Shown: positions 675-43,869 of the stretch, piece by piece
Position numbering within the stretch: the first letter of the stretch is position 1
Layout: each line of letters begins with the position of its first letter
NCBI RefSeq assembly: GCF_000315625.1
Contig: NW_005434671.1
Location: forward strand, 1,177,432-1,241,431
Length of the DNA: 64,000 bases
From: Guillardia theta CCMP2712
Lineage: Eukaryota > Protista > Cryptophyta
Direction: 5' to 3'
Program-made: the position numbers and the translations under genes
Notes under the pieces: generated by a model
Databases searched by the model: none
What the model was told of the DNA's origin: nothing
The model's input: only the letters and a program-made list of their open reading frames with translations

Positions 675-1010
675 ATTGTCCTCGTACTGATTTTTAACTT
701 AACTTTGAGTAAAGGCCCGGTGAGCACCCTAGCAACCAGTTCACTACTGAGTTAAGTTCGGCACCGTTACTCGAAGTCAAGTTAACCGTTACAGTAAAAG
801 AGAAATCAACGAAGGACAAACATTACTCAAAGTTAAGTCAAAGATCAGTACGAGGACAATCAGGAGAGTAGAGGAGGGCGCGGCTTGACCCTGACGGCCT
901 ACCGGGTCGCACAGGCCATACCGTAAGAGAAAAAACAGCGAGAACCAACCCTCACAATCTTTTACTCAAAGGTAAGCTAAAGATCAGTACGGTACGATCA
1001 GGAGAGTCGA
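675..1010. repeat. 38-bp inverted repeat pair (675-712 / 823-860) plus a third diverged direct copy (962-1010); MITE-like
   Basis: attgtcctcgtactgatttttaacttaactttgagtaa is the reverse complement of ttactcaaagttaagtcaaagatcagtacgaggacaat at 36/38 positions. Confidence 0.75.
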
Positions 1011-1902: not shown

Positions 1903-4900
1903 ATGATATCAGAGCAACAAGGGGAGAATCTTGCTGACTCTCACATCGGCCAGATCATTCGCCGCGAAGAGTATGAGAATACAAGTATTCATGAGCGGAG
2001 GAAGCAAAGGGACCGCAGGGAGAGCAGTACGTGCACGGGCGCTGCAGCCCTTGAGGAACTTGTTGTTGACGCAGAATCGGGTGAGGACTTCAACCAGTCA
2101 GATACGAATACAGACTCTTTGCAGCAAAGTGAGGGAATGCTGTCATCTTGGAAGAGGAGAATAAGCTCTCCAGGCTTGTTCCGAAGAAGCTCACTACTGT
2201 TTGGGGGATTAAAGTCTGTGGAAGACTCAATGAAGGCAACTTTTCTATCAGAATGGAAGGAGGAATTCAAGGAGATGAACTATCAGCCAACCGCAATTCT
2301 TTTGTTCACTTACCTCTCAGTACCTTGCTTTGCTCTCTTTTCTTGTCTCGGTGAATAATTTGAGCAAGGAAGGATTCGTAGATTGGAAGTACATTCCAGG
2401 CTCGACATACTTGCTCAGCAGTTTGATATGTTGCACGCTGGCAGGCATGTTCACCATGAAGAAGTATCGTTTGTTTTGCATGAGGAACTATGAATGTTTG
2501 ATCACGCTGTATTTGGTGCAATACGTCTCCGTTATCGTCATGTCTGCATGGCTGACAGAGATCGGCAACGTCCTCTTTTCGAAGGACAACGGGCTGGTTG
2601 CTTTTAACAGCACAACCTCCAAAGGGAGGTTCCAGAGAATCTGTCAAGAGCTCGATCCTGCGAAAGTCATGCTTCTTTCAGCAAATGTGAAGCCGTCAGG
2701 ATGCGATACGCTCATCATCAATGGCAGGCAGATGGGGATTTACATGAATGCTTTCCTGGAGCTCATTGTCTTTAGTCTGCACTGGAGAAGAACCTTGATA
2801 ATATCCATTTACATGGTGGTCTTGCTGATTGTTGCAGTGCTTTCCAGCGGAACATATGTTCTTTCGCTCATCACAGCTTCCGTCTTCTTCATTATTGCTG
2901 GTCTCTCCTCCAGTTTCTTCTGTTTTGTTCGTCAAGAGAATGAGAAGCAGACTTTTGCGATCGCTAAGCGGACTAGGTTTGCGTCAGAGCAAAGCAGAAA
3001 TCTTGTGAACACCCTGATGCCCGAGAACGTCTTATCGCGGATCACGACCTTGAAATCGAAGGAGTTCGTCGGAGTCACGATACCGCGATGTACTATCATG
3101 TTCTGCTCTCTCGCTCCTCAAGATGTCATACAGAAAGAATCTTCGCAGAAGATCTTCAACTTCCTTGACTCCGTCTTTGAGACATTCGATTCCAAAGTGC
3201 AACAGTACGGCATGTACAAGTATCAACACGTCGGTGACTGGTACATCATCACCTGCCCTCGAGCTGCAGCTCCGTTCGATGAGGCAGAGCAGTCAAGAGG
3301 CTATCCATCTGAGTACGCCTCGAGGATGGTGAAGTTGGCCAAGAGCCTGATGGACATCGCGGCGATGCAGAAGATCGGCAGTACCCCTTTGAGCCTCAAG
3401 GTAGGGATCAGCTATGGCAGCGTCGCAGGAGCTGTCATTGGGATGCATCGAGCCTTCTACTGTGTGTACGGGGACACGACCAACACGGCGGCAAGGATGT
3501 GCAAGTACTCCCAAGGGGCTCAGATCTTGTGCACGAAAGCGTTTGCTGACCTGCTGGAGACGTGCTCAATGGTGGAAGCTGACTGCCGGTCTGAGGGGAC
3601 CATCGACATCAAGGGGAAGGGGGCGATGGAAGTCTTCTCGATCGAGGTGAAGGGGCCGTCAGATCCGCTCGGAATGGAACGACGATCCGCCTCCATCTCA
3701 GGGGTCTCCACGCATTCCTCACTCTCTGCCTCCGTTGTTGGGATGAAGTTGGAACACTTGAGCGCGCAGAGCAGAGAGTTGCTCAAGAGCGATCAGTACA
3801 GGATCGGCAGACTATGGTGCCAGTTCAAAGATGCAACCTCAGAGGAGCTGTTTCTCAATCAGAGTCTGAATACTCACCGTCTCAAGCTGACCATTGGCAT
3901 CGCTCTTCACTTTTGCGCAGTTTTCCTGCAATTTCATATGGTTGTGTTCCCGGAGTATTCCTACAATTATGCCAACTTTGGAGCTTCGCAGCTTGAGGAG
4001 GAAAAGAAGATTGTGTTTCGCGCACTGACGATTCATCTTGTGATCTCAGGTTTGTGCAGCGCTTGTCTTGTGGCTGGGATGTGGACTTTCCAGTACAAGT
4101 TGCTCTTGTATCAATGGATCTTCGTGATCATGAAGCTGGTGTTTCTCTCTATCTGTGTTTATGCAAACAAGCATGAAGCTCCTCTCTCATGGACTCTTTG
4201 TTTTCCTTTCTTGTTTGTTGCTGCCCAGTCCAATTCCTGTGGTATTCAATTCAATCAAGCCCTCGTCGTTTGGATTGTCAGTATCATCACCTTCGTAGCC
4301 TGGACCGTCTCCAAGTCTTCGCGCAATTATCTCGTGGAGGACTTGGTCATCCTCCTCCTCACCGGCATCGTCGCGCTCATCGTCGTCCGGGTCAGCGATC
4401 GCTCGGAGCGATTCCGGTGGAGGATGCATCAGGTGTTCAACATCGAGTCATGTCGGCTCAAGGAGATCCTCTCTGACCTCATGCCCTCCAACGTGGCAGA
4501 GGACATGATGAGCAACTCGATGAAGCAACCTTGTCAGATGGAGCTCGCTGTCGTGCTCGAGCTCGATCTCTGCAACTTCACGACGCTCTCGCAAGGAATG
4601 GATCCAATCGAGCTTGCCAACATGATCCATCGGGTCTTCTCCAAGTTCGATCTCATCGTGCAAGACAAGGGGTTGTTCAAGATGGATACAGTAGGCGATG
4701 CTTACATCGTCTCCGGTTGGCTACCGCAGGAGAAGGGATGGAGGTTGAAGAAGGAAACCAAACAAATCTGTCATTCTATGCTTGACCTCGCGCGCTCAAT
4801 GCTCACAATCGTGCAAGAGCAATCGCTGGGAGAGAACAGCACCCTGAGCTGCAGGATCGGCGTCTCCATCGGCATGGTGGCATCTGGCATCTTGGGAAAG

Positions 4901-5380
4901 ATTCAGTCACGGTTTCATATCATCGGACAGGCTCTGAAGGAGGCGGAGCAGCTCGAACATGACGCGCAAGTCAACTCAGTTCATGTCTGCGACTCCTTCC
5001 TTCGAATCCTCGCTGTGGACAAGGTCGGGGATCCCCCGCACCCTCCTGCTTCTGTGATGGAACGGAAGAAGGCGATGAAAGAGGGCAGGTCTCTAAAGCA
5101 GCTCTTTGGGCATTCGAACAAGACCAACGAGGAGGACGAGGAGGAGAAGGCTGTAAGCAGACATTTCAGCAGAAGCGCCTCACAGATTCTCCTTGAGCTG
5201 GACGAGGTAGTCAGCCCTGATGGCTGGGACCTCATCGAGACTCGGGAGTTTCACCCTCCTATCAGCGATCAGGATGACGCCAACGCGTCCGTGGCGTTCA
5301 AGCTGCTCGAACCGTCAAAGACAAGTCACGTGCTGAGACCGCAGCCTCCTCAAGTCTCGATGAGCAGAGTACCGCTGTAG
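1903..5380 (+). CDS. membrane class III nucleotidyl cyclase, 6TM-C1-6TM-C2 topology (probable guanylyl cyclase); frame change near 2320-2358
   Basis: ORF 2330-5380 has two hydrophobic clusters and two cyclase domains (KYQHVGDWY...KVGISYGSVAGAVIG...YCVYGDTTNTAARM...IDIKGKGAM; ELDLCNFT...KMDTVGDAY...RIGVSIG); upstream ORF 1900-2358 supplies the N-terminus and the start of TM1. Confidence 0.93.
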
Positions 5381-8371: not shown

Positions 8372-8883
8372 GATAAGAGTCTGAAGGGATGAGATCGATT
8401 TGCAGCGCCTCGCTTCACCTACTCCCTTGCGTTCCCGCTTTCGGCGCCATAGTCGCCGAGCCGAGCACCGGAAAAAGAACAAAAAAGAAATCAAGAAAAA
8501 AGAATGTGTAAAATAAAAAAAGAATTGCAGGGACCGGTTTGTGAAACGTGGATTCATGTGCCTGCAGTAGGGTTGGGTGGTTAGATTCCACGGGGGTAGG
8601 GTGATTAATTTGAGGGGGTGGTATAGATTATGCCATATGATTCAGCTCGTCATGCCTTCAGCGTCTCGATTCATTAAAAGGCTTAAAAGAGAAAATCGTG
8701 TATAGGGGAATCCCTTCGTACTCTTGGCGGGGGTATAGTTCATTTACAGGGTGGGATAAATCAGAGAAGGTAGGTAGTGACGATGGATGGGGTGGGGTTC
8801 ACGGGGTGTGCAGGCGCATGGCGCTGAGGAATGAAATGTGTGAAGGGGGAGGAGGAAGGAGGGAGAAGGGAGAGGGAGCGAGG

Positions 8884-9186
8884 AAGGGAGAGAGAAGATG
8901 CAAGGGGAGGGGAAGAGGTAGAAGAGGAATATATGAAACTTTAAAGGGAGAAAGAAGATGCAAGGAGAGGGGAAGAGGTAGAAGAGGAATATATGAAACT
9001 TTAAAGGGAGAAAGAAGATGCGAGGAGAGGGGAAGAGGTAGAAGAGGAATGTATGAAACTTTAAAGGGAGAAAGAAGATGCAAGGGGGGGGGAAGAGGTA
9101 GAAGAGGAATATATGAAACTTTAAAGGGAGAAAGAAGATGCAAGGGGAGGGGAAGAGGTAGAAGAGGAATATATGAAACTTTAAAG
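8884..9186. repeat. 60-bp purine-rich minisatellite x5
   Basis: Unit aagggagaaagaagatgcaaggagaggggaagaggtagaagaggaatatatgaaacttta repeated with few substitutions. Confidence 0.95.
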
Positions 9187-9672
9187 GCATGTAAAGAGAT
9201 AAAATTCAAGATACTCAAGATGAAATTGAGTTTTGCAGAAAATTGGGGAAGTGGAATACGCGGGAACTTGACCCTTTGAATAGAGACTTGGAAGAAGAGA
9301 GACATTTGGGATGGAGTAGAGTATGATAGCTAAGTAAGCCTGTAGGTCTTCTGCATGATGCAAGGAATGCATAAGTGGAGATGTATTATGCATTCAAAGG
9401 ACAGGATGAGTTGTACTCCTTCAGTCAAAGTTGTGAGTTCTACAATGCACTCGTCTTCTCTCAAGCACTCCTCTTGTAACGGCCCTCCCATGAAGCATGG
9501 GACAAAAAGAGCACGAGAATTGTAGTAGAAGCAAGCGTCTCAGGAAGTGAACTGTACGATGATTTATCGAAAACTCTTATCTAGACAAAGCCACTTCACA
9601 TTTAGTGTAAAACGTTTGAGGCAACCATGTCGATGCCCTCGAATCTGATCGTTTGGTGGTTGTATAGGGACC

Positions 9673-20147: not shown

Positions 20148-21554
20148 TCAAAATTGAGGTTCTAAGCTCGTGTTGCGAGTAGTCGCGGACTTCTTGACCG
20201 GTACCTGCAGCCCCCCCGGTACTACCTCCACCGAGTACGACCCTCGCTCCCGGATCGGGTTGAAAAGCTCGTGATGCTCCGCAACCCACTCCTGGCTCTT
20301 CTGGTGCAAGCTCTCCATGCTCGTCGTCGACGCAACCGTATCCTTGATCCCAAAGCTCTGCAGACTGCATCGCCTGAGTACCTGCTTGCCCTCGTCAGAC
20401 CCTCGGACTGCTTCGGACATGGCGATGCACTAATATCACCCCGTCGCCTCTGACGCCATGCTTGACGTCCTTGACCAGGTCGTCTTGCAAGCTGCTCCTC
20501 CTGTCGACAGCCTTGCTGCCTTGGTTCAAGCTCACATGCAGGTCGATGGGCCTGTCGATGTCTCCGTACGGATCCAGCTGCGCCAGCACCCAAGCACACT
20601 CGCTCTCAGCCCCGGGCCCTCACACGCGCAGCAGAGCGCTGCCTTACCTGCTGCCGATGCCTCTCCTCCTTGTCGTCGTCCCGCACGTGCAGCATGAGCA
20701 TCCGGGAGACGAGGCCGACTTTCTTCTCTACGGAGTGCTCTTTCGAGCTCCTCTCATGCTTGTACTTGAGGTCGTGCCCTAGCCACTCGTTTGTTACTTC
20801 ACAGTGTCTCACGTACTCGTGATCCGCTGGCTTCACGCCCTCCACCCGCATCCCAAAGTACGTCCTGTACCCCTTGGTGTCCTTGAGGCTCCGCACCTCT
20901 ATCGTCGCCTCGACCGGTAGCGCCTTCCTCCCCGCCTGCTGGCTCTTGCCGTACAGCAGCATGCTCCCTGCCTCGCTCCGTCCCTCTCCGCGGATGCCCT
21001 CCAGCAGTCTGTCACGGTCCGCTGCCTTGGTGGCCGGGCCCAGCAGCTGCCTGTCCTTGCCCTTGTCAGCATCGACGGAGTCCTACAGGCTTGCTCCTCC
21101 TGCCTTACCTGAGCGGGAGGCCTGCGTCCGGCACTTGACCGAAGAGCTTCTCGAAGGGCTTGTTGGCGACGAGCAGCATGGGCTCGCCATCGGGGCTTTT
21201 CTTGAGGCCGACGGCGAAGGGGGTCTGGGCTCTGAAGTCGGAGCTGGCCTGGATCATGTCGATTTCGCGGAGGAAGCGGAAGTTTGCGTCGGCGATACCT
21301 GTTGTCTTTGTCTGCTTTCTTGGAGTTTTCACGTTTGCAGGCTCTTGAGGAAACAGATCGTTCTTTTGCCGTATGTTACGTGTCTGTATCTTGGCAGGCT
21401 CGCAACAACGTAGGAGGAAGCGCAGAGGGGGGAGGTCGGTGAGCTGCCATGGAGGCTGCGGGTTCGGATCGCTGTTCTGCGGATCCATTCTTGCAAGAGC
21501 AGATCTTGTTTTTCGTCGCTCAGGACAAGGTCTGCTGCTAGGGCGTTTCTTCAT
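20148..21554 (-). CDS. LOV-like PAS-domain protein, paralog A (4 exons)
   Basis: Spliced product FAVGLKKSPDGEPMLLVANKPFEKLFG..GLPLRQLLGPAT..LLYGKS..SLKDTKGYRTYFGMRV follows the PAS/LOV pattern; three GT-AG introns. Confidence 0.75.
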
Positions 21555-21923
21555 ATGGTGTCAAATAGAAAATTGTTTTCCTCGACCATATGTCTGAGAC
21601 CTCACCAAGCAATCTCAGAATCACTTAACTTTTTTCGGACTCGGCATTGAAAAGGCTAGTCAAATCCCCGATCTTTTTTTTTGCGGAGTCGAATCCAGCG
21701 GCGCCGCGGCCCGGCCCGGCGGCAGCGTACGGTCCGGGTGCAGCATCACTGAGTGCCGGCGATGCGGCCGAGGGCCGGCACCCAGGCTGGTCCGATCATC
21801 CCCGGGCCCGGCATGGACTGAGGTCGACTCAGGAGACCGTCGACGGGGCCGCTGCGCCGACGGGACACTCCGGCCCCGCGGTAAGCTTTGTGCAATGTGA
21901 ATCATTTGGACTGAGAATTTTCA

Positions 21924-23324
21924 CTAATGGAGCATCAAAGGATGCTTAACCGGTACCTGCAGCCCCCCCGGTACTACCTCCACCGAGTACGACCCTCGCT
22001 CCCGGATCGGGTTGAAAAGCTCGCGATGCTCCGCAACCCACTCCTGGCTCTTCTGGTGCAAGCTCTCCATGCTCGTCGTCGACGCAACCGTATCCTTGAT
22101 CCCAAAGCTCTGCAGACTGCATCGCCTAAGTACCTGCTTGCCCTCGTCAGACCCTCGGACTGCTTCGGACATGGCGATGCACTAATATCACCCCGTCGCC
22201 TCTGACGCCATGCTTGACGTCCTTGACCAGGTCGTCTCTGCTCCTCCTGTCGACAGCCTTGCTGCCTTGGTTCAAGCTCACATGCAGGTCGATGGGCCTG
22301 TCGATGTCTCCGTACGGATCCAGCTGCGCCAGCACCCAAACACACTCGCTCTCAGCCCCGGGCCCTCACACGCGCAGCAGAGCGCTGCCTTACCTGCTGC
22401 CGATGCCTCTCCTCCTTGTCGTCGTCCCGCACGTGCAGCATGAGCATCCGGGAGACGAGGCCGACTTTCTTCTCTACGGAGTGCTCTTTCGAGCTCCTCT
22501 CATGCTTGTACTTGAGGTCGTGCCCTAGCCACTCGTTTGATGTTTGACAGTGTCTCACGTACTCGTGATCCGCTGGCTTCACGCCCTCCACCCGCATCCC
22601 AAAGTACGTCCTGTACCCCTTGGTGTCCTTGAGGCTCCGCACCTCTATCGTCGCCTCGACCGGTAGCGCCTTCCTCCCCGCCTGCTGGCTCTTGCCGTAC
22701 AGCAGCATGCTCCCTGCCTCGCTCCGTCCCTCTCCGCGGATGCCCTCCAGCAGTCTGTCACGGTCCGCTGCCTTGGTGGCCGGGCCCAGCAGCTGCCTGT
22801 CCTTGCCCTTGTCAGCATCGACGGAGTCCTACAGGCTTGCTCCTCCTGCCTTACCTGAGCGGGAGGCCTGCGTCCGGCACTTGACCGAAGAGCTTCTCGA
22901 AGGGCTTGTTGGCGACGAGCAGCATGGGCTCGCCATCGGGGCTTTTCTTGAGGCCGACGGCGAAGGGGGTCTGGGCTCTGTAGTCGGAGCTGGCCTTGGT
23001 TCTGTCAACCTCGCAGAGGAAGCGGAAGCTTGCGTTTGCGATTCTAGTAGGCTTGTTCTGCATAGGAGATCTCTGTGCCTGAGTATGCAAACTGCTTGTA
23101 TGTACATTTCGTGGCGTCAGATTGTTGTCAGCAATGTCTTGTCTCACTTCAGCAGCCTGGAAACGATTGTGATGCACTAGGTGGGATCTTTTAATTGTTT
23201 TGGATTCGCAGCATTTTGGGATGATGGATGGAAGAGGAAAGATATCGCCCAAAGACCATTGGGGAGTCACTGACGTGTCCTGTTCTTTCCTGGAATCCCC
23301 TCCCCTGCAGTCGCACTGCAGCAT
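21924..23324 (-). CDS. LOV-like PAS-domain protein, paralog B
   Basis: Core near-identical to A and C, own N-terminus and own tail (KHPLMLH*). Confidence 0.75.
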
Positions 23325-23531
23325 GTTTAACAGCTGCCCGGTCTGTCGCTTCGCGTGCTGACGAGTCTCTTGGGCCGTGGGTACACATTTTCACTCATCG
23401 GAATAATAAGTTTTTAGTTCAATTTAGTAGTCACCTGTGGCGGGCCCGGCTTCCGGGGTCCGAAAGCCCGGCCAAGAGGGCAAAAGTTGACTCTATATGA
23501 CTAGGTACGTCTCCCAGGAGCCGTACAACTC

Positions 23532-24824
23532 ATGCCACAAGGCAAACACGAAGAATGCGAGGCTGAACAGCAGCCCCCATGGCAGCTCACCGACCTCCTC
23601 CCTCTCCACTCCTTCCAACGTTGTTGCGAGCCTGCCAAGATACAGACACGAGTCGTGAAACAAAAAATTGACCCCCTCCCTATCTCCAAGCCTACCACAA
23701 CAGCTGACACAAGATTCCGCTTCCTCTGCGAGGTTGACAGAACCAAGGCCAGCTCCGACTTCAGAGCCCAGACCCCCTTCGCCGTCGGCCTCAAGAAAAG
23801 CCCCGATGGCGAGCCCATGCTGCTCGTCGCCAACAAGCCCTTCGAGAAGCTCTTCGGGCAAGTGCCGGACGCAGGCCTCCCGCTCAGGTAAGGCAGGAGG
23901 AGCAAGCCTGTAGGACTCCGTCGATGCTGACAAGGGCAAGGACAGGCAGCTGCTGGGCCCGGCCACCAAGGCAGCGGACCGTGACAGACTGCTGGAGGGC
24001 ATCCGCGGAGAGGGAAGGAGCGAGGCAGGGAGCATGCTGCTGTACGGCAAGAGCCAGCAGGCGGGGAGGAAGGCGCTACCGGTCGAGGCGACGATAGAGG
24101 TGCGGAGCCTCAAGGACACCAAGGGGTACAGGACGTACTTTGGGATGCGGGTGGAGGGCGTGAAGCCAGCGGATCACGAGTACGTGAGACACTGTCAAAC
24201 ATCAAACGAGTGGCTAGAGCACGACCTCAAGTACAAGCATGAGAGGAGCTCGAAAGAGCACTCCGTAGAGAAGAAAGTCGGCCTCGTCTCCCGGATGCTC
24301 ATGCTGCACGTGCGGGACGACGACAAGGAGGAGAGGCATCGGCAGCAGGTAAGGCAGCGCTCTGCTGCGCGTGTGAGGGCCCGGGGCTGAGAGCGAGTGT
24401 GCTTGGGTGCTGGCGCAGCTGGATCCGTACGGAGACATCGACAGGCCCATCGACCTGCATGTGAGCTTGAACCAAGGCAGCAAGGCTGTCGACAGGAGGA
24501 GCAGAGACGACCTGGTCAAGGACGTCAAGCATGGCGTCAGAGGCGACGGGGTGATATTAGTGCATCGCCATGTCCGAAGCAGTCCGAGGGTCTGACGAGG
24601 GCAAGCAGGTACTCAGGCGATGCAGTCTGCAGAGCTTTGGGATCAAGGATACGGTTGCGTCGACGACAAGCATGGTGAGCTTGCACCAGAAGAGCCAGGA
24701 GTGGGTTGCGGAGCATCGCGAGCTTTTCAACCCGATCCGGGAGCGAGGGTCGTACTCGGTGGAGGTAGTACCGGGGGGGCTGCAGGTACCAGTCAGGACC
24801 CTATCCATAGACGATTGCACGTGA
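23532..24824 (+). CDS. LOV-like PAS-domain protein, paralog C
   Basis: Inverted copy; introns gtaaggc..ggacag, gtaaggc..gcgcag, gtgatat..aagcag restore one continuous frame. Confidence 0.78.
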
Positions 24825-25117
24825 AGAAGCATCGTTGTGTCTGCTGATTTGGATCACTTGTTTTCTTAGAAGTGTATTTGTCCTTGCTTTTGTTTTTAAG
24901 TACATGATATTATGCTTGCTCTTACAATCTAGAATCCTTTGATTTCCAGTCATAGCTTATCATCATAGATGTTCATGGTTTCTCTTCACATAATGGCACG
25001 GCCACCAGCTTCGGAATAGGCAACTTCACTCCCTCGTTATTTGCTGTTCATACTTGTGTTCGACATATACAGAGGATTGGCTTCAAGCAACTTTCCGTAA
25101 CTGAAATGATGAAGTAG

Positions 25118-26452
25118 TCAAAACAAAATAAGACAACCTTCAGGTTCATACTTCTCCGGCATCTTGACCGGTACCTGCAGCCCCCCCGGTACTACCTCCA
25201 CCGAGTACGACCCTCGCTCCCGGATGGGGTTGAAAAGCTCGTGATGCTCCGCGACCCACTCCTGGCTCTTCTGGTCCAGGTTTACCATGCTTGTTGTCGA
25301 CGCAACCGTATCCTTGATCCCGAAGCTTTCTAAACCGCACCTTCTGAGTACCTGCTTGCCCTCGTCAGACCTTCGGGTTCTCCCGTCAGGCGATCGATGC
25401 ATATCACCCCGTCGCCTCTGACGCCATGCTTGACGTCCTTGACCAGGTGAAGTTGACCTCTGATGTCGACTGTGCGTTTCCCCTTTTGGGATTTTACCTG
25501 GACATCCTTTGCAGAGTCAACTTGCATGTATGGGTCGAACTGCAAGCTCAGCGCTCAGACACTGACATTGCAACGAAATGCGTCACTCACCGCCAGGCGC
25601 TCCTTCTTCTCCTTGATGTCGTCCCGCACGTGCTTCATGAGCATCCGGGACGCAAGGCCGACTGTTCTTTCAACTTTATCTTCCATTGACGCTTTGTGAA
25701 GCTTGTACTTGAGGTCGTGCTCTAGCCACTCGTTTGATGTTTGACAGTATCGCACATAGAAAAGATCCCTGACTTGAACATTCTTCAACCGCATCCCAAA
25801 GTACGTCCTGTACCCCTTGGTGTCCTTGAGGCTCCGCACCTCTATCGTCGCCTCGACCGGTAGCGCCTTCCTCCCCGCCTGCTGGCTCTTGCCGTACAGC
25901 AGCATGCTCCCTGCCTCGCTCCTTCCCTCTCCGCGGATGCCCTCCAGCAGTCTGTCACGGTCCGCTGCCTTGGTGGCCGGGCCCAGCAGCTGCCTGTCCT
26001 TGCCCTTGTCAGCATCGACGGAGTCCTACAGGCTTGCTCCTCCTGCCTTACCTGAGCGGGAGGCCTGCGTCCGGCACTTGACCGAAGAGCTTCTCGAAGG
26101 GCTTGTTGGCGACGAGCAGCATGGGCTCGCCATCGGGGCTTTTCTTGAGGCCGACGGCGAAGGGGGTCTGGGCTCTGTGGTCGTAGCTGGCCTTGGTTCT
26201 GTCAACCTCGCAGAGGAAGCGGAAGCTTGCGTGAGTGGTCTTATTGTGTCTGGGCTGATCAGCGAGTTCAATGTCTTCTTGAGGAGGATCGTCTCTCGAT
26301 CTGTCATGTGCTGGTCCCGTCTGAATCCTTGCAGGCTCGCAACAGCGGAAAAGGGAGCGGAGGGATAAGAAGTCGGTGTACAGCCACGCATCGCTGTCTT
26401 GGGCTCCTGTTTTGATCGCCTTATCTCTAGGTTCACAATCGATGCATTCCAT
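25118..26452 (-). CDS. LOV-like PAS-domain protein, paralog D (divergent middle)
   Basis: PAS block and intron 1 near-identical to the other copies; intron 2 and flanking coding sequence diverged but in frame. Confidence 0.75.
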
Positions 26453-26683
26453 AGCGTGTAAAGATTGGCAGCAAAGGAAATACAAGACAGCGGTAAGTAG
26501 CACACTAGCTAAGAGAACCAGAGGGAATGGAGTGAGAGTCAAGGGAGGATGATGTGTGCGAGGGGACGGTCCGGAGCAGTAAGAGAGGGGGCGTAAAGAG
26601 AGAAGACGGTTGAAGGATAGAGGAGGGCAAGGCACGATGGAGAGATGCAGTAGCGATGGAATGTGAGAACTGACAGTGGAGGA

Positions 26684-26800
26684 GAGGGAGGAGGGGCAGG
26701 AGAGGAGGAGTAGGAGAGGAGGGGCAGGAGAGGAGGGGCAGGAGAGGAGGGGCAGGAGAGGAGGGGCAGGAGAGGAGGGGCAGGAGAGGAGGGACAGGAG
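26684..26800. repeat. GGAGGGGCAGGAGA-type tandem repeat
   Basis: Directly visible. Confidence 0.85.
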
Positions 26801-27198
26801 TTAAGGAGGCCCAACAGCTATGACGCTGTCGTAGCCATTTCCGAAAGATTTCAACGAAACAGGAAGATGTAGGGGTAGGGGTGGGTACCCCGCCTCATCC
26901 ACTTTCTGTCAGAATCACTCAATGGACCAGGTCATGGAACAGGTTCAGTTGACAACTGGAGGGGTAGTGGAGGATGCCGTGGGAAAGTGTTTCAACGAAG
27001 ATAGACAGCTTTTTAAAATGTCTGTTTGGGAGGGAGGAGTCACGGAGGGGGAGCAGCAGCAGTGAAGTGAGGTAGAGGAAGTCACTGATCAGCATTTCAA
27101 TCACATACTGGCAGCATCTCAATCACATCACTTCGATACCTTCACATGGCTACCATCAAGTGATGTTTATTGTAGTTATCCTTACATTCACCTCGCAA

Positions 27199-29407: not shown

Positions 29408-29494
29408 TAGAGCAAAAGAGTCTAGTTCTGCTCAGGGACAATTCAAGGTCTAGAAATGGACGTTTGTTAGCAAGTTGAAAGGATATTGAGCTGG

Positions 29495-29650
29495 CCTGAC
29501 TGACTGACTGACTGACTGACTGACTGACTGACTGACTGACTGACTGACTGACTGACTGACTGACTTGACTGACTTGACTGACTTGACTGACTTGACTGAC
29601 TGACTGACTGACTGACTGACTGACTGACTGACTGACTGACTTGCTGTCTG
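29495..29650. repeat. (CTGA)n microsatellite with CTTGACTGA variants
   Basis: Directly visible. Confidence 0.97.
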
Positions 29651-30129
29651 ACTTGCTGCGGCAGCCCCCATTCCATTTCTTATGGAGAGGCGCATCTAGC
29701 ATGTGAAATTGAAAGCAGTTTGCTCATTGTTTAAGTTTGAATTTACATTGACAAATATCAAAAACATTTTGAATACTCATACCGTCATGGAGATGCTACC
29801 CCACCCTGATGTTGCATAACAAGTTGCCTCTAGAAGAGGGGGTGAAAGGGTATACTTTTTCACCCCTCACAGAGACCTATCAAAAGTGGCTCAAGTTGGG
29901 GGTAATGACCAAGAAGGGGTAGGGGTACTGTCCTAGACCAGGGGTGGGTCTCCGTCAGAGCAATTTTGAGTTGGGTGCGCCGTTGCTGCAGGACATGGCC
30001 TAGAAGACAGGCAGTGCGATGATGAGGAAAGACCGTGAGAGCCGAGACGATGAACAGAACAGAAGGACGAGGAGAACAAGAGGACGAGGAGAACAACAAG
30101 ACCGTTGGAGAATAAGAGGATTATAAGGA

Positions 30130-43050: not shown

Positions 43051-43509
43051 AAACGGGATAATAGGGATTTTTCCAATTACAACAAGCGCCAACTGTCCAC
43101 TTGATGATTTTGTGAGTGGAGTATATTTTGGCACAGTGACTCGAAGGAAAGAAACGAAATTCCAACTCAACAAAGCTCGTGTCTGACCTGCTTGAAGGAT
43201 ACTGCTGTGTGAGAAGCGAACACACAGGACACGAGGGAGGCAAATGAGTGAACATAAGAACATCGGAGATGTAATCCCATGACTCAAAGGTGTGTGTTTT
43301 GATTGATGATTGAAAGCGGCAGGATGATTGTCACGTGCAAACACAGGTCTGGTTGAGACGCTGTTTATGAAGGCTTTACGGTCGGCAAGGATAAGGTGGT
43401 CCAATCCGCGGTAGTAGAGGTGCCGCAGAGGGACTCGAACCTGATTAAGCGAGGGCTGATCTCCACGAGTGACATGAATCAGCTCCTGTAAGACCAATAA
43501 AGCCTTCAG

Positions 43510-43778
43510 ACGAGCAGTATGGGAAGAGACTGGGCTACTAGAGGACGTCTTCAACGAGCCGCAGTATGGGAAGAGACCGGGCTACTAGAGGACGTCTTCA
43601 ACGAGCAGTATGGGAAGAGACCGGGCTACTAGAGGACGTCTTCAACGAGCAGTATGGGAAGAGACTGGGCTACTAGAGGACGTCTTCAACGAGCAGTATG
43701 GGAAGAGACCGGGCTACTAGAGGACGTCTTCAACGAGCAGTATGGGAAGAGACCGGGCGCGGCTACTAGAGGACGTCA
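43510..43778. repeat. 44-bp minisatellite x6
   Basis: Unit cgagcagtatgggaagagaccgggctactagaggacgtcttcaa; gcagtat starts at 43514, 43561, 43605, 43649, 43693, 43737. Confidence 0.95.
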
Positions 43779-43869
43779 TCAGAGGAGAAGAGATTTTTCT
43801 CAGTGATGAGACTCCGGTTTGCCTTGGGCCCGCCCCGGAGTCTGGAACGATTGGGAGATGCTGGGGGAG

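What the first reader, a model, noticed from the sequence alone, without database searches (positions are those of the whole stretch)
20148..26452. Four PAS-gene paralogs form a gene-conversion mosaic: homogenised cores with private N- and C-termini
Seen: A, B and C share ~1 kb of near-identical DNA including introns, and D shares ~440 bp (about 25790-26230, intron 1 included). Identity ends sharply near FRFL (5') and GLQVPV (3'); the termini are otherwise largely unalignable yet open. Shared variants give conflicting groupings. AB|CD: LGHD vs LEHD, MES vs MV. AD|BC: HHEL vs HREL. AC: DFRAQ and the exact N-terminal patches ccatggcagctcaccgacctcc and gttgttgcgagcctgccaagatacagacacg. D also keeps exact ~45-bp islands inside a diverged exon. 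Inference: old paralogs exchanging segments, giving a constant sensor core with variable ends.
Basis: partly seen in the sequence, partly recalled or inferred. Interest (0 to 1): 0.8.

Follow-up and report, generated by a model that had tools for sequence, protein, structure and literature searches.

The report
Four algal paralogs homogenised by conversion
Four old neighbouring copies of a lineage-restricted, probably PAS/LOV-like gene in the alga Guillardia theta keep their central ~1 kb almost letter-identical, introns included, because the copies overwrite one another; this is a clean example of ordinary interlocus gene conversion, not a new mechanism.

Summary
The window is Guillardia theta CCMP2712 nuclear DNA. 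Four intact three-intron genes lie at 20148-26452: A, B and D on the minus strand, C on the plus strand. A, B and C share about 1.05-1.1 kb at 99-100% identity, introns included. D shares a 453-bp block plus exact islands of 48-56 bp.

The N-terminal coding parts are homologous but saturated at silent sites (dS 0.8 or more). The intergenic spacers show no similarity to each other. So the copies are old and only the core is young.

A metagenome contig from a relative (L001) is the positional ortholog of C. In the shared block it differs from every CCMP2712 copy at 13-14 of 385 sites, whereas the copies differ from each other at only 1-4. That is concerted evolution.

Independent contigs cross every private/shared junction that was laid, and k-mer depth scales about 1 : 3-3.6 : 4.4. 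This argues against collapse. No long read phases the core.

"PAS" is only weakly supported: no Pfam hit, low-confidence models, but consistent LOV-type fold matches.

The family is confined to Guillardia and Hanusia. Earlier notes of this scan describe many similar conversion cases on other DNA of this genome. Verdict: a new member of a known kind, of moderate-low interest.

The parts
20148..21554 (-). Copy A. Exons 21554-21109, 21050-20648, 20577-20440, 20381-20148. The GenBank model starts at the ATG at 21488 and is wrongly fused to the downstream gene.
   Evidence: Gene model. P0005 = GUITHDRAFT_100112.
21924..23324 (-). Copy B (GUITHDRAFT_150068). Exons 23324-22855, 22796-22394, 22323-22192, 22133-21924.
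   Evidence: Transcript contig L002 is 100% identical over 23331-21743, with introns 1 and 2 spliced and intron 3 retained. RNA reads lie on its private 3' UTR.
23532..24824 (+). Copy C, inverted relative to A, B and D. Exons 23532-23887, 23946-24348, 24419-24550, 24609-24824.
   Evidence: The positional ortholog L001 in a relative covers 23477-25064.
25118..26452 (-). Copy D (GUITHDRAFT_100115). Exons 26452-26052, 25993-25591, 25539-25408, 25351-25118.
   Evidence: P0006 is identical to my model.
20193..21250 (-). Homogenised core of A. It carries A-type patches at 20794-20800 (4 differences), 20486-20491 (a 6-nt insertion) and the 5' edge 21251-21283 (8 differences).
   Evidence: In the relative's C ortholog L001 these patches are A-type.
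21946..23045 (-). Homogenised core of B.
23700..24795 (+). Homogenised core of C.
25783..26235 (-). Recent conversion block of D: the end of exon 1, intron 1 and the first part of exon 2. It differs from A, B and C at 3-4 of the 385 aligned sites of the block shared by all four.
   Evidence: It carries the CCMP2712-specific states at the sites that differ from L001.
25170..25448 (-). D's older, partly converted 3' part. Exact islands at 25401-25448 (48 nt) and 25170-25225 (56 nt). Exon 4 has dS about 0.4, against 1.15 in D's middle. A further 48-nt island lies at 25701-25748.
23325..23531 (.). A 207-bp unique spacer between the head-to-head B and C start codons, presumably a divergent promoter. 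The head-to-head arrangement is conserved in the relative L001.
   Evidence: Exact contigs spanning 23006-23647 in runs X1 and X2.

Best explanation
A, B, C and D are old, clustered paralogs of a Guillardia/Hanusia-restricted gene. The product has an N-terminal tail modelled without structure at very low confidence (possibly disordered), a probable LOV-type PAS fold, a predicted long helix (very low confidence) and a conserved C-terminal segment.

Repeated non-reciprocal recombination between the copies (interlocus gene conversion, without crossover) keeps overwriting the alignable central part. Substitutions and an indel therefore spread through all copies of one genome.

The tracts stop where sequence similarity runs out: near FRFL at the 5' end and just after GLQVPV at the 3' end. 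A, B and C take part over the whole ~1.05-1.1 kb. D received a recent 453-bp tract and older or shorter tracts further 3'.

Shown: the age of the paralogs, identity at silent and intron sites, sharp boundaries, paralogs closer than orthologs, and segment-wise conflict of relationships.

Inferred: the molecular mechanism (heteroduplex or synthesis-dependent repair), the direction of each event, and a GC bias.
For: 1. Silent-site divergence. N-terminal coding part: dS 0.83 to saturated. Core among A, B and C, and the 5' block of D: dS 0-0.05. D's middle: dS 1.15. D's exon 4: about 0.4. The introns of A, B and C are identical apart from two single-base B differences; intron 1 is identical in all four.

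2. The intergenic spacers have no detectable similarity to each other.

3. L001, from a related organism, is the positional ortholog of C. In the N-terminal part it has 22/174 differences to C, against 63 to A and 102 to B; in the 3' flank it has 14/103. In the 385-nt block shared by all four copies, it differs from each copy at 13-14 sites, while the copies differ from each other at 1-4. There are 36 sites where A=B=C differ from L001. In three patches (16 sites), L001 equals A against B=C=D.

4. The N-terminal part groups A with C. The core groups AB|CD (4 sites), with single AC|BD and AD|BC sites.

5. Runs of concordant variable sites between A, B and C pairs: permutation p <= 1e-4.

6. C is inverted and the flanks are not homogenised, so unequal crossing-over cannot be the homogenising process.

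7. Assembly. Exact contigs from two runs cross the junctions (21382-21978, 23006-23647, 24761-25191). In run X2 the word depth is about 55-57 in private parts, 153-204 in the A/B/C core and 250 in the four-copy block.

8. In a second relative (run X9), a core contig at 2-4 times the single-copy depth carries at least 7 differences at sites where all four CCMP2712 copies agree. An intron-2 contig at about 3x carries a 6-nt deletion.

9. GC3 is 0.74-0.87 in the homogenised parts, 0.48-0.56 in the N-termini and 0.61 in D's unconverted middle. S/W differences between C and D's middle are 78 to 37, binomial p = 1.7e-4.
Against: - No long read phases the 1.1-kb core, so the linkage of each N-terminus to its tail rests on the original assembly, on the short-read transcript contig L002 (B), and on L001 (C, in another organism).
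- Inside the core, the conflicting groupings rest on single sites, which recurrent mutation could produce.
- The polarised substitutions are too few to show a GC bias (3 W>S against 3 S>W).
- Run X9 holds more than one haplotype, so its depth ratio is only approximate.
- Only one ortholog (C) is available from the more distant relative. It has therefore not been shown that that relative's own copies are also homogenised.
Confidence: 0.9

Rival explanations
1. Very recent duplication of a whole gene, followed by extremely fast divergence of the ends only.
For: The core identity of 99-100% would fit a recent duplication.
Against: Silent sites of the N-terminal coding part are saturated and the spacers are unrelated. 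The private N-termini of B and C, and the head-to-head layout, already exist in relative L001. Private parts of A, B, C and D are matched by contigs of relative X9. So the copies predate those splits, yet the cores are genome-specific.
Confidence: 0.03
2. Assembly artefact: repeats collapsed, or private ends joined to the wrong cores.
For: No long read spans a core. The Logan contigs break at the repeat.
Against: Every private/shared junction that was laid is crossed by exact contigs in runs X1 and X2. Depth scales with the assembled copy number, at about 1: 2.7-3.6: 4.4. L002 carries all B-private core variants together with B's private ends. L001 has the C-type N-terminus, core, tail and flank on one contig.
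Confidence: 0.03
3. Homogenisation by unequal crossing-over or birth-and-death turnover of tandem units, rather than by conversion.
For: A and B are direct repeats 1746-1752 bp apart.
Against: The spacers and ends are not homogenised. C is inverted. D is converted over only 453 bp plus small islands. The positional orthologs of B's N-terminal exon and of C are kept in relative L001.
Confidence: 0.03
4. Nucleotide-level purifying selection (for example an embedded RNA or regulatory element) keeps the core identical.
For: None specific. Identity does extend through the introns.
Against: The same core differs from L001 at 36 sites, in exons and introns alike, while staying identical among the copies. 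D's middle has diverged freely, with dS 1.15.
Confidence: 0.01

Closest known systems
Concerted evolution of clustered paralogs by interlocus (ectopic, non-allelic) gene conversion, as reviewed for duplicated genes in PMC3924837 and PMC3924832
   Same: Old duplicates with diverged flanks. Near-identical internal tracts that include silent sites and introns. Sharp tract limits. Paralogs more alike than orthologs. Mosaic relationships along the gene.
   Different: Nothing mechanistic. The host (a cryptophyte nucleus) and the gene family are new. I found no paper describing this family, or interlocus conversion in the G. theta nuclear genome, in the searchable library.
Other gene-conversion islands noted by this scan in the same genome (RWP-RK, SPRY, PA14, LysM and gene palindromes: s1-434715, s1-437061, s1-432751, s1-441165, s1-431610)
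   Same: The folded-domain core is homogenised and GC-rich, while the surrounding coding DNA is diverged.
   Different: Those are AI notes I did not re-test. Here four whole genes take part, one of them only partially, and an ortholog from a relative gives a direct paralog-versus-ortholog test.
LOV-type PAS domains (for example CagFbFP 6ywr, PpSB1-LOV 5j3w, phototropin LOV 2z6d)
   Same: The predicted beta2-alpha-beta3 topology is followed by a helix. Foldseek's top hits are almost all LOV domains, with probability about 0.99-1.0, TM by target up to 0.57 and 20-25% identity over about 110 columns.
   Different: No Pfam PAS model matches even at E <= 10, and no PDB sequence match was found. Model confidence is low (pLDDT 36-48). 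From memory of the LOV motif GRNCRFLQGP, the corresponding stretch here reads GLPLRQLLGP, which lacks the photoactive Cys. That alignment was not tested with a tool.
Invertible-segment or shufflon-like switches (the idea in note s1-441444)
   Same: B and C form a 1107-nt, 98% inverted repeat around a 631-bp spacer that holds both N-terminal exons.
   Different: No recombinase or recombination site is evident. No joint or inverted isomer appeared in any laid run. The spacer has the same orientation in runs X1 and X2; relative L001 likewise has B's N-terminal exon head-to-head upstream of C. Inverted paralogs converting each other is enough to explain it.

Membership tests
Interlocus gene conversion / concerted evolution | The paralogs are older than the identical tract (diverged flanks and ends). 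| tested here: met
   N-terminal dS is 0.83 to saturated, against 0-0.05 in the core. The spacers show no similarity to each other.
Interlocus gene conversion / concerted evolution | Identity holds at silent sites and introns, not only at replacement sites. | tested here: met
   Intron 1 is identical in all four copies. Introns 2 and 3 are identical in A and C, with one base different in B in each. Core dS is about 0.
Interlocus gene conversion / concerted evolution | Paralogs within a genome are more alike than positional orthologs between genomes. | tested here: met
   Within the genome there are 1-4 differences in 385 sites; each copy has 13-14 to the C ortholog L001. Run X9 supports this, with the caveat that it holds mixed haplotypes. 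Only one ortholog from L001's organism is available.
Interlocus gene conversion / concerted evolution | Relationships change along the sequence (mosaic). | tested here: met
   D is identical over 453 bp and then has dS 1.15. The 5' edge and two patches read A=L001 against B=C=D. The N-terminal part groups A with C, while the core groups AB|CD.
Interlocus gene conversion / concerted evolution | GC enrichment of the converted tracts (biased gene conversion). | tested here: inconclusive
   The contrast in GC3 (0.74-0.87 against 0.48-0.61) and the 78:37 S/W asymmetry fit. Polarised changes are 3 against 3, and domain-related codon usage is a confounder.
PAS fold (LOV-like) | Match to a curated PAS sequence model. 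| tested here: not met
   Pfam gives no family at E <= 10, for single exons or full-length proteins. A PDB sequence profile search gives no match at E <= 10.
PAS fold (LOV-like) | A five-stranded antiparallel sheet with intervening helices (beta2-alpha-beta3). | tested here: inconclusive
   The AF2 topology is E-E-H-H-H-E-E-E, but pLDDT is 36-48. Foldseek's top hits are almost all LOV/PAS, with TM by target up to 0.57. The Atlas structural neighbours all contain PAS domains, at TM 0.28-0.37.
PAS fold (LOV-like) | Flavin-binding residues, including the adduct-forming Cys. | not tested
   There is only a recollection-based alignment, which suggests the Cys is replaced. No tool alignment to a LOV sequence was made.
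Invertible DNA switch | Both orientations of the segment between the inverted repeats exist in a population. | tested here: inconclusive
   No joints or alternative junctions appeared in four runs. However, 31-mer contigs and 60-nt reads cannot cross the 1.1-kb arms.

The most novel reading that the evidence does not exclude
This cluster is one visible instance of an unusually pervasive, domain-centred and GC-raising interlocus conversion regime in the Guillardia theta nuclear genome. The scan holds 39 notes mentioning gene conversion for this genome. If real, this would imply very active homologous recombination, perhaps cryptic meiosis, in an alga whose sexual cycle, to my knowledge, has not been observed. 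It would also mean that paralog trees and duplication dates for this genome are systematically misleading.
Probability: 0.3. Interest if true: 0.55.

Novelty: new member of a known kind. Interest (0 to 1): 0.33.

Why it matters
- It gives a well-controlled case of concerted evolution in a cryptophyte nucleus, with positional orthologs, introns and copy-number depth all available.
- It shows that paralog identity in G. theta cannot be read as duplication age.
- It flags annotation errors: copy A is fused to its neighbour, copy B has an altered intron-3 donor, and no protein model for copy C turned up.
- It defines a Guillardia/Hanusia-restricted, probably LOV-derived PAS-like family of unknown function.
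- It does not reveal a new mechanism.

Tried and rejected
- **Pfam.** Scans of single exons and of the full-length proteins found nothing.
- **PDB sequence profile.** Nothing.
- **Exhaustive search of 1.84 bn representative proteins with exon 2.** It returned only the locus's own proteins, a fragment of the relative's C ortholog (P0002, encoded on L001), and a spurious mussel Ig-repeat hit.
- **Word searches.** They added only D and one Hanusia phi protein.
- **JGI metagenome contig scan.** No relatives.
- **Fungal origin and RIP.** I first took the locus for fungal and considered repeat-induced point mutation. I dropped this once the organism was identified.
- **Sawyer-type run test on D.** It is weak by construction, because the D-identical block has no variable sites. 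I used regional dS and the outgroup comparison instead.
- **Polarising W/S changes with D and L001.** This gave too few sites.
- **Mobile coding cassette.** Rejected because the N-termini are homologous to each other and the introns are retained.
- **Shufflon-like inversion.** Not supported, but not testable with the short data available.
- **Expression of C.** It could not be separated from that of A and B, because reads in the shared core fit several copies. A's 3' end lay outside the 6,000-nt stretch I could lay.
Full report
**What is there.**
The stretch 20148-26452 holds four copies of one gene. A, B and D lie on the minus strand and C on the plus strand.
- The repeat finder reports the B/C arms at 21949-23055 and 23687-24793: 1107 nt, 98% identical.
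- The A/C arms are 802 + 294 nt at 98%.
- The C/D arms are 23704-24156 and 25783-26235: 453 nt at 98%.

A single model with three GT..AG introns (58, 70 and 58 nt; 58, 51 and 56 nt in D) leaves all four genes open:

| Copy | Coordinates | Length |
|---|---|---|
| A | 21554..20148 | 406 aa (384 aa from the ATG at 21488 that GenBank uses) |
| B | 23324..21924 | 404 aa |
| C | 23532..24824 | 368 aa |
| D | 26452..25118 | 389 aa |

D's exact islands of 48, 48 and 56 nt inside diverged sequence are also there.

**Organism and family.**
An exhaustive search of 1.84 billion representative proteins with C's exon 2 returned, apart from a spurious mussel Ig-repeat hit, two proteins: P0001, a fragment of copy B, and P0002, a fragment encoded on the metagenome contig L001.

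Cluster look-up names the GenBank members of their clusters as Guillardia theta CCMP2712 hypothetical proteins:
- GUITHDRAFT_150068 is copy B.
- GUITHDRAFT_100112 is copy A, wrongly fused to the downstream gene.
- GUITHDRAFT_100115 is copy D.

The only other relative found is one Hanusia phi transcriptome protein, at 59% identity. Nothing turned up in the JGI metagenome contigs or among short proteins. The family is therefore confined to the Guillardia/Hanusia lineage and, as far as the searches show, has only these four members in G. theta.

**Is it a PAS gene?**
- Pfam finds nothing, either in single exons or in the full-length proteins, even at E <= 10. A PDB sequence profile search finds nothing.
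- The AlphaFold models are of low confidence: pLDDT 36 for the full length and 48 for the domain. They do give the PAS order of elements (two strands, helices, three strands) followed by a helix.
- Foldseek's top hits for both models are almost exclusively LOV-type PAS domains. Probability is about 0.99-1.0, TM by target reaches 0.57, and identity is 20-25% over about 110 columns.
- The ESM Atlas structural neighbours all contain PAS domains.

I take a LOV-derived PAS fold as probable, at roughly three in four. Membership by sequence model was tested and not met. The N-terminal ~95 residues are modelled without secondary structure at very low pLDDT (24-29), which is compatible with disorder but does not demonstrate it.

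**Age of the copies against age of the core.**
The N-terminal coding parts align at protein level through a shared motif (W-L-D ... CCEPAKIQT), so they are homologous. Nei-Gojobori estimates give the following:

| Region | dS | dN |
|---|---|---|
| N-terminal part, A-C | 0.83 | 0.37 |
| N-terminal part, other pairs | 1.2 to saturated | 0.63-0.84 |
| Core among A, B, C; D's first 126 core codons | 0-0.05 | not listed here |
| D's middle (97 codons) | 1.15 | about 0.4 |
| D's exon 4 | about 0.4 | about 0.04 |

A 13-codon island at the end of D's exon 3 has no change at all. The intergenic spacers give no BLAST match to one another.

Identity in the core therefore cannot come from protein-level constraint or from recent whole-gene duplication. 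Exon 4 is conserved in Hanusia and has a low dN/dS. So intron 3 is real, even though one transcript contig retains it.

**The decisive comparison.**
L001 is a 2147-nt ENA metagenome contig from a related organism. It has two relevant parts:
- One part matches 23477-25064, that is C with both flanks.
- Upstream and head-to-head, it carries B's N-terminal exon, at 87% identity.

In the N-terminal part L001 has 22/174 differences to C, against 63 to A, 102 to B and 77 to D. In the tail and 3' flank it has 14/103 to C. It is therefore the positional ortholog of C.

In the 385-nt block shared by all four copies, however, L001 differs from A, B, C and D at 14, 13, 14 and 14 sites. The four copies differ from each other at only 1-4.

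Across the core there are 36 sites where A=B=C differ from L001. At 24 of these D has the CCMP2712 state, and 12 of those lie in D's recent block. At 8, all in D's unconverted part, D has L001's state.

In three patches (16 sites), the C ortholog L001 carries the sequence that in CCMP2712 is private to A, against B=C=D. The patches are the 5' edge encoding REIDMIQ against CEVDRTK, the CEVT/CQTS patch, and a 6-nt indel.

Paralogs closer than orthologs, together with variants that sit at different positions in different genomes, is the textbook signature of concerted evolution by interlocus conversion.

**A second relative.**
Run X9 is a metagenome holding G. theta-like DNA that is 0-5% diverged in the private parts.
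- One 493-nt core contig, at 2-4 times the single-copy depth, has 13 differences to A. At least 7 of them lie at sites where all four CCMP2712 copies agree.
- One intron-2 contig, at about 3x depth, carries a 6-nt deletion plus two substitutions.

This agrees with the L001 result. X9 holds more than one haplotype, so the depth ratios are only approximate.

**Mosaic signal inside this genome.**
- Runs of concordant variable sites between A, B and C pairs exceed all 10,000 site permutations.
- Among informative sites in the core, AB|CD has 4, AC|BD has 1 and AD|BC has 1. The N-terminal part groups A with C.
The strong evidence is the regional change in branch lengths and the outgroup test.
- C is inverted and the flanks are not homogenised. 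The homogenising process must therefore be conversion without crossover, not unequal crossing-over.

**Assembly.**
I laid window 20420-26419, the 6,000-nt limit; this leaves out A's 3' end.
- Exact contigs from runs X1 (2011, possibly the source sample) and X2 (2021) cross 21382-21978, 23006-23647 and 24761-25191. These cover A's private N-terminal part and the A-B spacer through B's 3' junction, then B's 5' junction through the spacer into C's N-terminus, and then C's 3' junction through the spacer into D.
- D's private stretches are also covered exactly.
- X2 word depth is about 55-57 on private DNA, 59-76 on D-private DNA, 153-204 on the A/B/C core and 250 on the four-copy block. That is roughly 1 : 3 : 4.4.

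This fits the assembled copy numbers and leaves little room for further identical copies or for collapse.

Two further pieces of evidence bear on linkage:
- The transcript contig L002 (JGI 3300017164) is 100% identical to B from 23331 to 21743. It carries all B-private core variants, has introns 1 and 2 spliced, and retains intron 3.
- L001 shows the same linkage of ends to core for C.

No long reads were available. Phasing across the 1.1-kb core therefore still rests on the original assembly plus these two contigs.

**Expression.**
Raw RNA reads (run X22, 60 nt, apparently 3'-biased) lie on B's private 3' UTR and, weakly, on D's 3' UTR. Molecule ends cluster at 24879. Reads on C's core cannot be told from those of A or B. 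A's 3' end was outside the laid stretch.

**GC.**
GC3 is 0.74-0.87 in the homogenised parts, 0.48-0.56 in the N-termini and 0.61 in D's unconverted middle, against 0.80 for the same codons in A, B and C. Differences between C and D's middle are S in C and W in D 78 times, against 37 the other way (p = 1.7e-4).

This fits GC-biased conversion. However, polarised changes are only 3 against 3, and codon usage in folded domains is a confounder. I call it suggestive.

**Comparison with what is known.**
Interlocus conversion and concerted evolution of clustered duplicates is a well-described process (for example the reviews PMC3924837 and PMC3924832, listed). I found no paper on this family, or on interlocus conversion in the G. 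theta nucleus. The G. theta data in PMC5635611 have 3 chromosomes at 26% GC, which I take to be the nucleomorph.

Earlier notes of this scan describe many similar conversion islands elsewhere in this genome. I did not test those. They first pointed me to the organism, which I then confirmed myself.

The shufflon-like reading of the same stretch (s1-441444) has no support. No joints or alternative junctions were seen. The data could not have crossed the arms, though, so that test is inconclusive.

**Verdict.**
The functional gloss ('constant sensor core, variable ends') is unproven. This is a clean new example of a known process in a lineage-restricted, probably LOV-like PAS family.

Noticed in passing
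window 20148-21554, and P0005: The GenBank model GUITHDRAFT_100112 (872 aa) fuses copy A to the downstream minus-strand gene: it leaves A's last exon at GGLQ and skips A's stop. The B model GUITHDRAFT_150068 uses another intron-3 donor and lacks KHGVRGDG. No protein model for copy C turned up in the collections searched.
   Followed up: partly
L002 (JGI 3300017164 contig) = window 23331-21743: This transcript contig of B has introns 1 and 2 spliced but intron 3 retained, which gives a premature stop (…GDGVILVHRHVRSSPRV*). It may be an intron-retention isoform.
   Followed up: partly
window 26660-26810: A 14-nt tandem repeat (GAGGAGGGGCAGGA, about 9 copies) lies some 200 bp upstream of D's start codon.
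   Followed up: no
window 29491-29660: A long (CTGA)n / (CTGACTTGA) microsatellite.
   Followed up: no
window 8824-9247 and 43470-43780: Two further tandem arrays, with periods of 60 nt (about 6-7 copies, 95-98% identical) and 44 nt (about 7 copies).
   Followed up: no
window 2330-5380 (+): A long open frame with an adenylate/guanylate cyclase catalytic domain (Pfam PF00211, E = 2e-51, two stretches).
   Followed up: no
L001 386-423, against window 675-713 and 823-860: A ~38-nt element in the relative's B-C spacer matches two places near the start of the window at 92-95%. It may be a small dispersed repeat.
   Followed up: no
P0007 (Hanusia phi, EukProt): Its first ~79 residues look like an out-of-frame or intron-1-retained translation of the homologous exon 1, and its middle also looks frame-disturbed. 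The Hanusia model is probably not a correct protein.
   Followed up: no
run X9 (freshwater metagenome) and ENA ERZ930064 (L001): Environmental assemblies hold close relatives of G. theta, 1-5% and about 10-13% diverged in non-coding DNA. X9 seems to hold at least two haplotypes at 25495-25639.
   Followed up: partly
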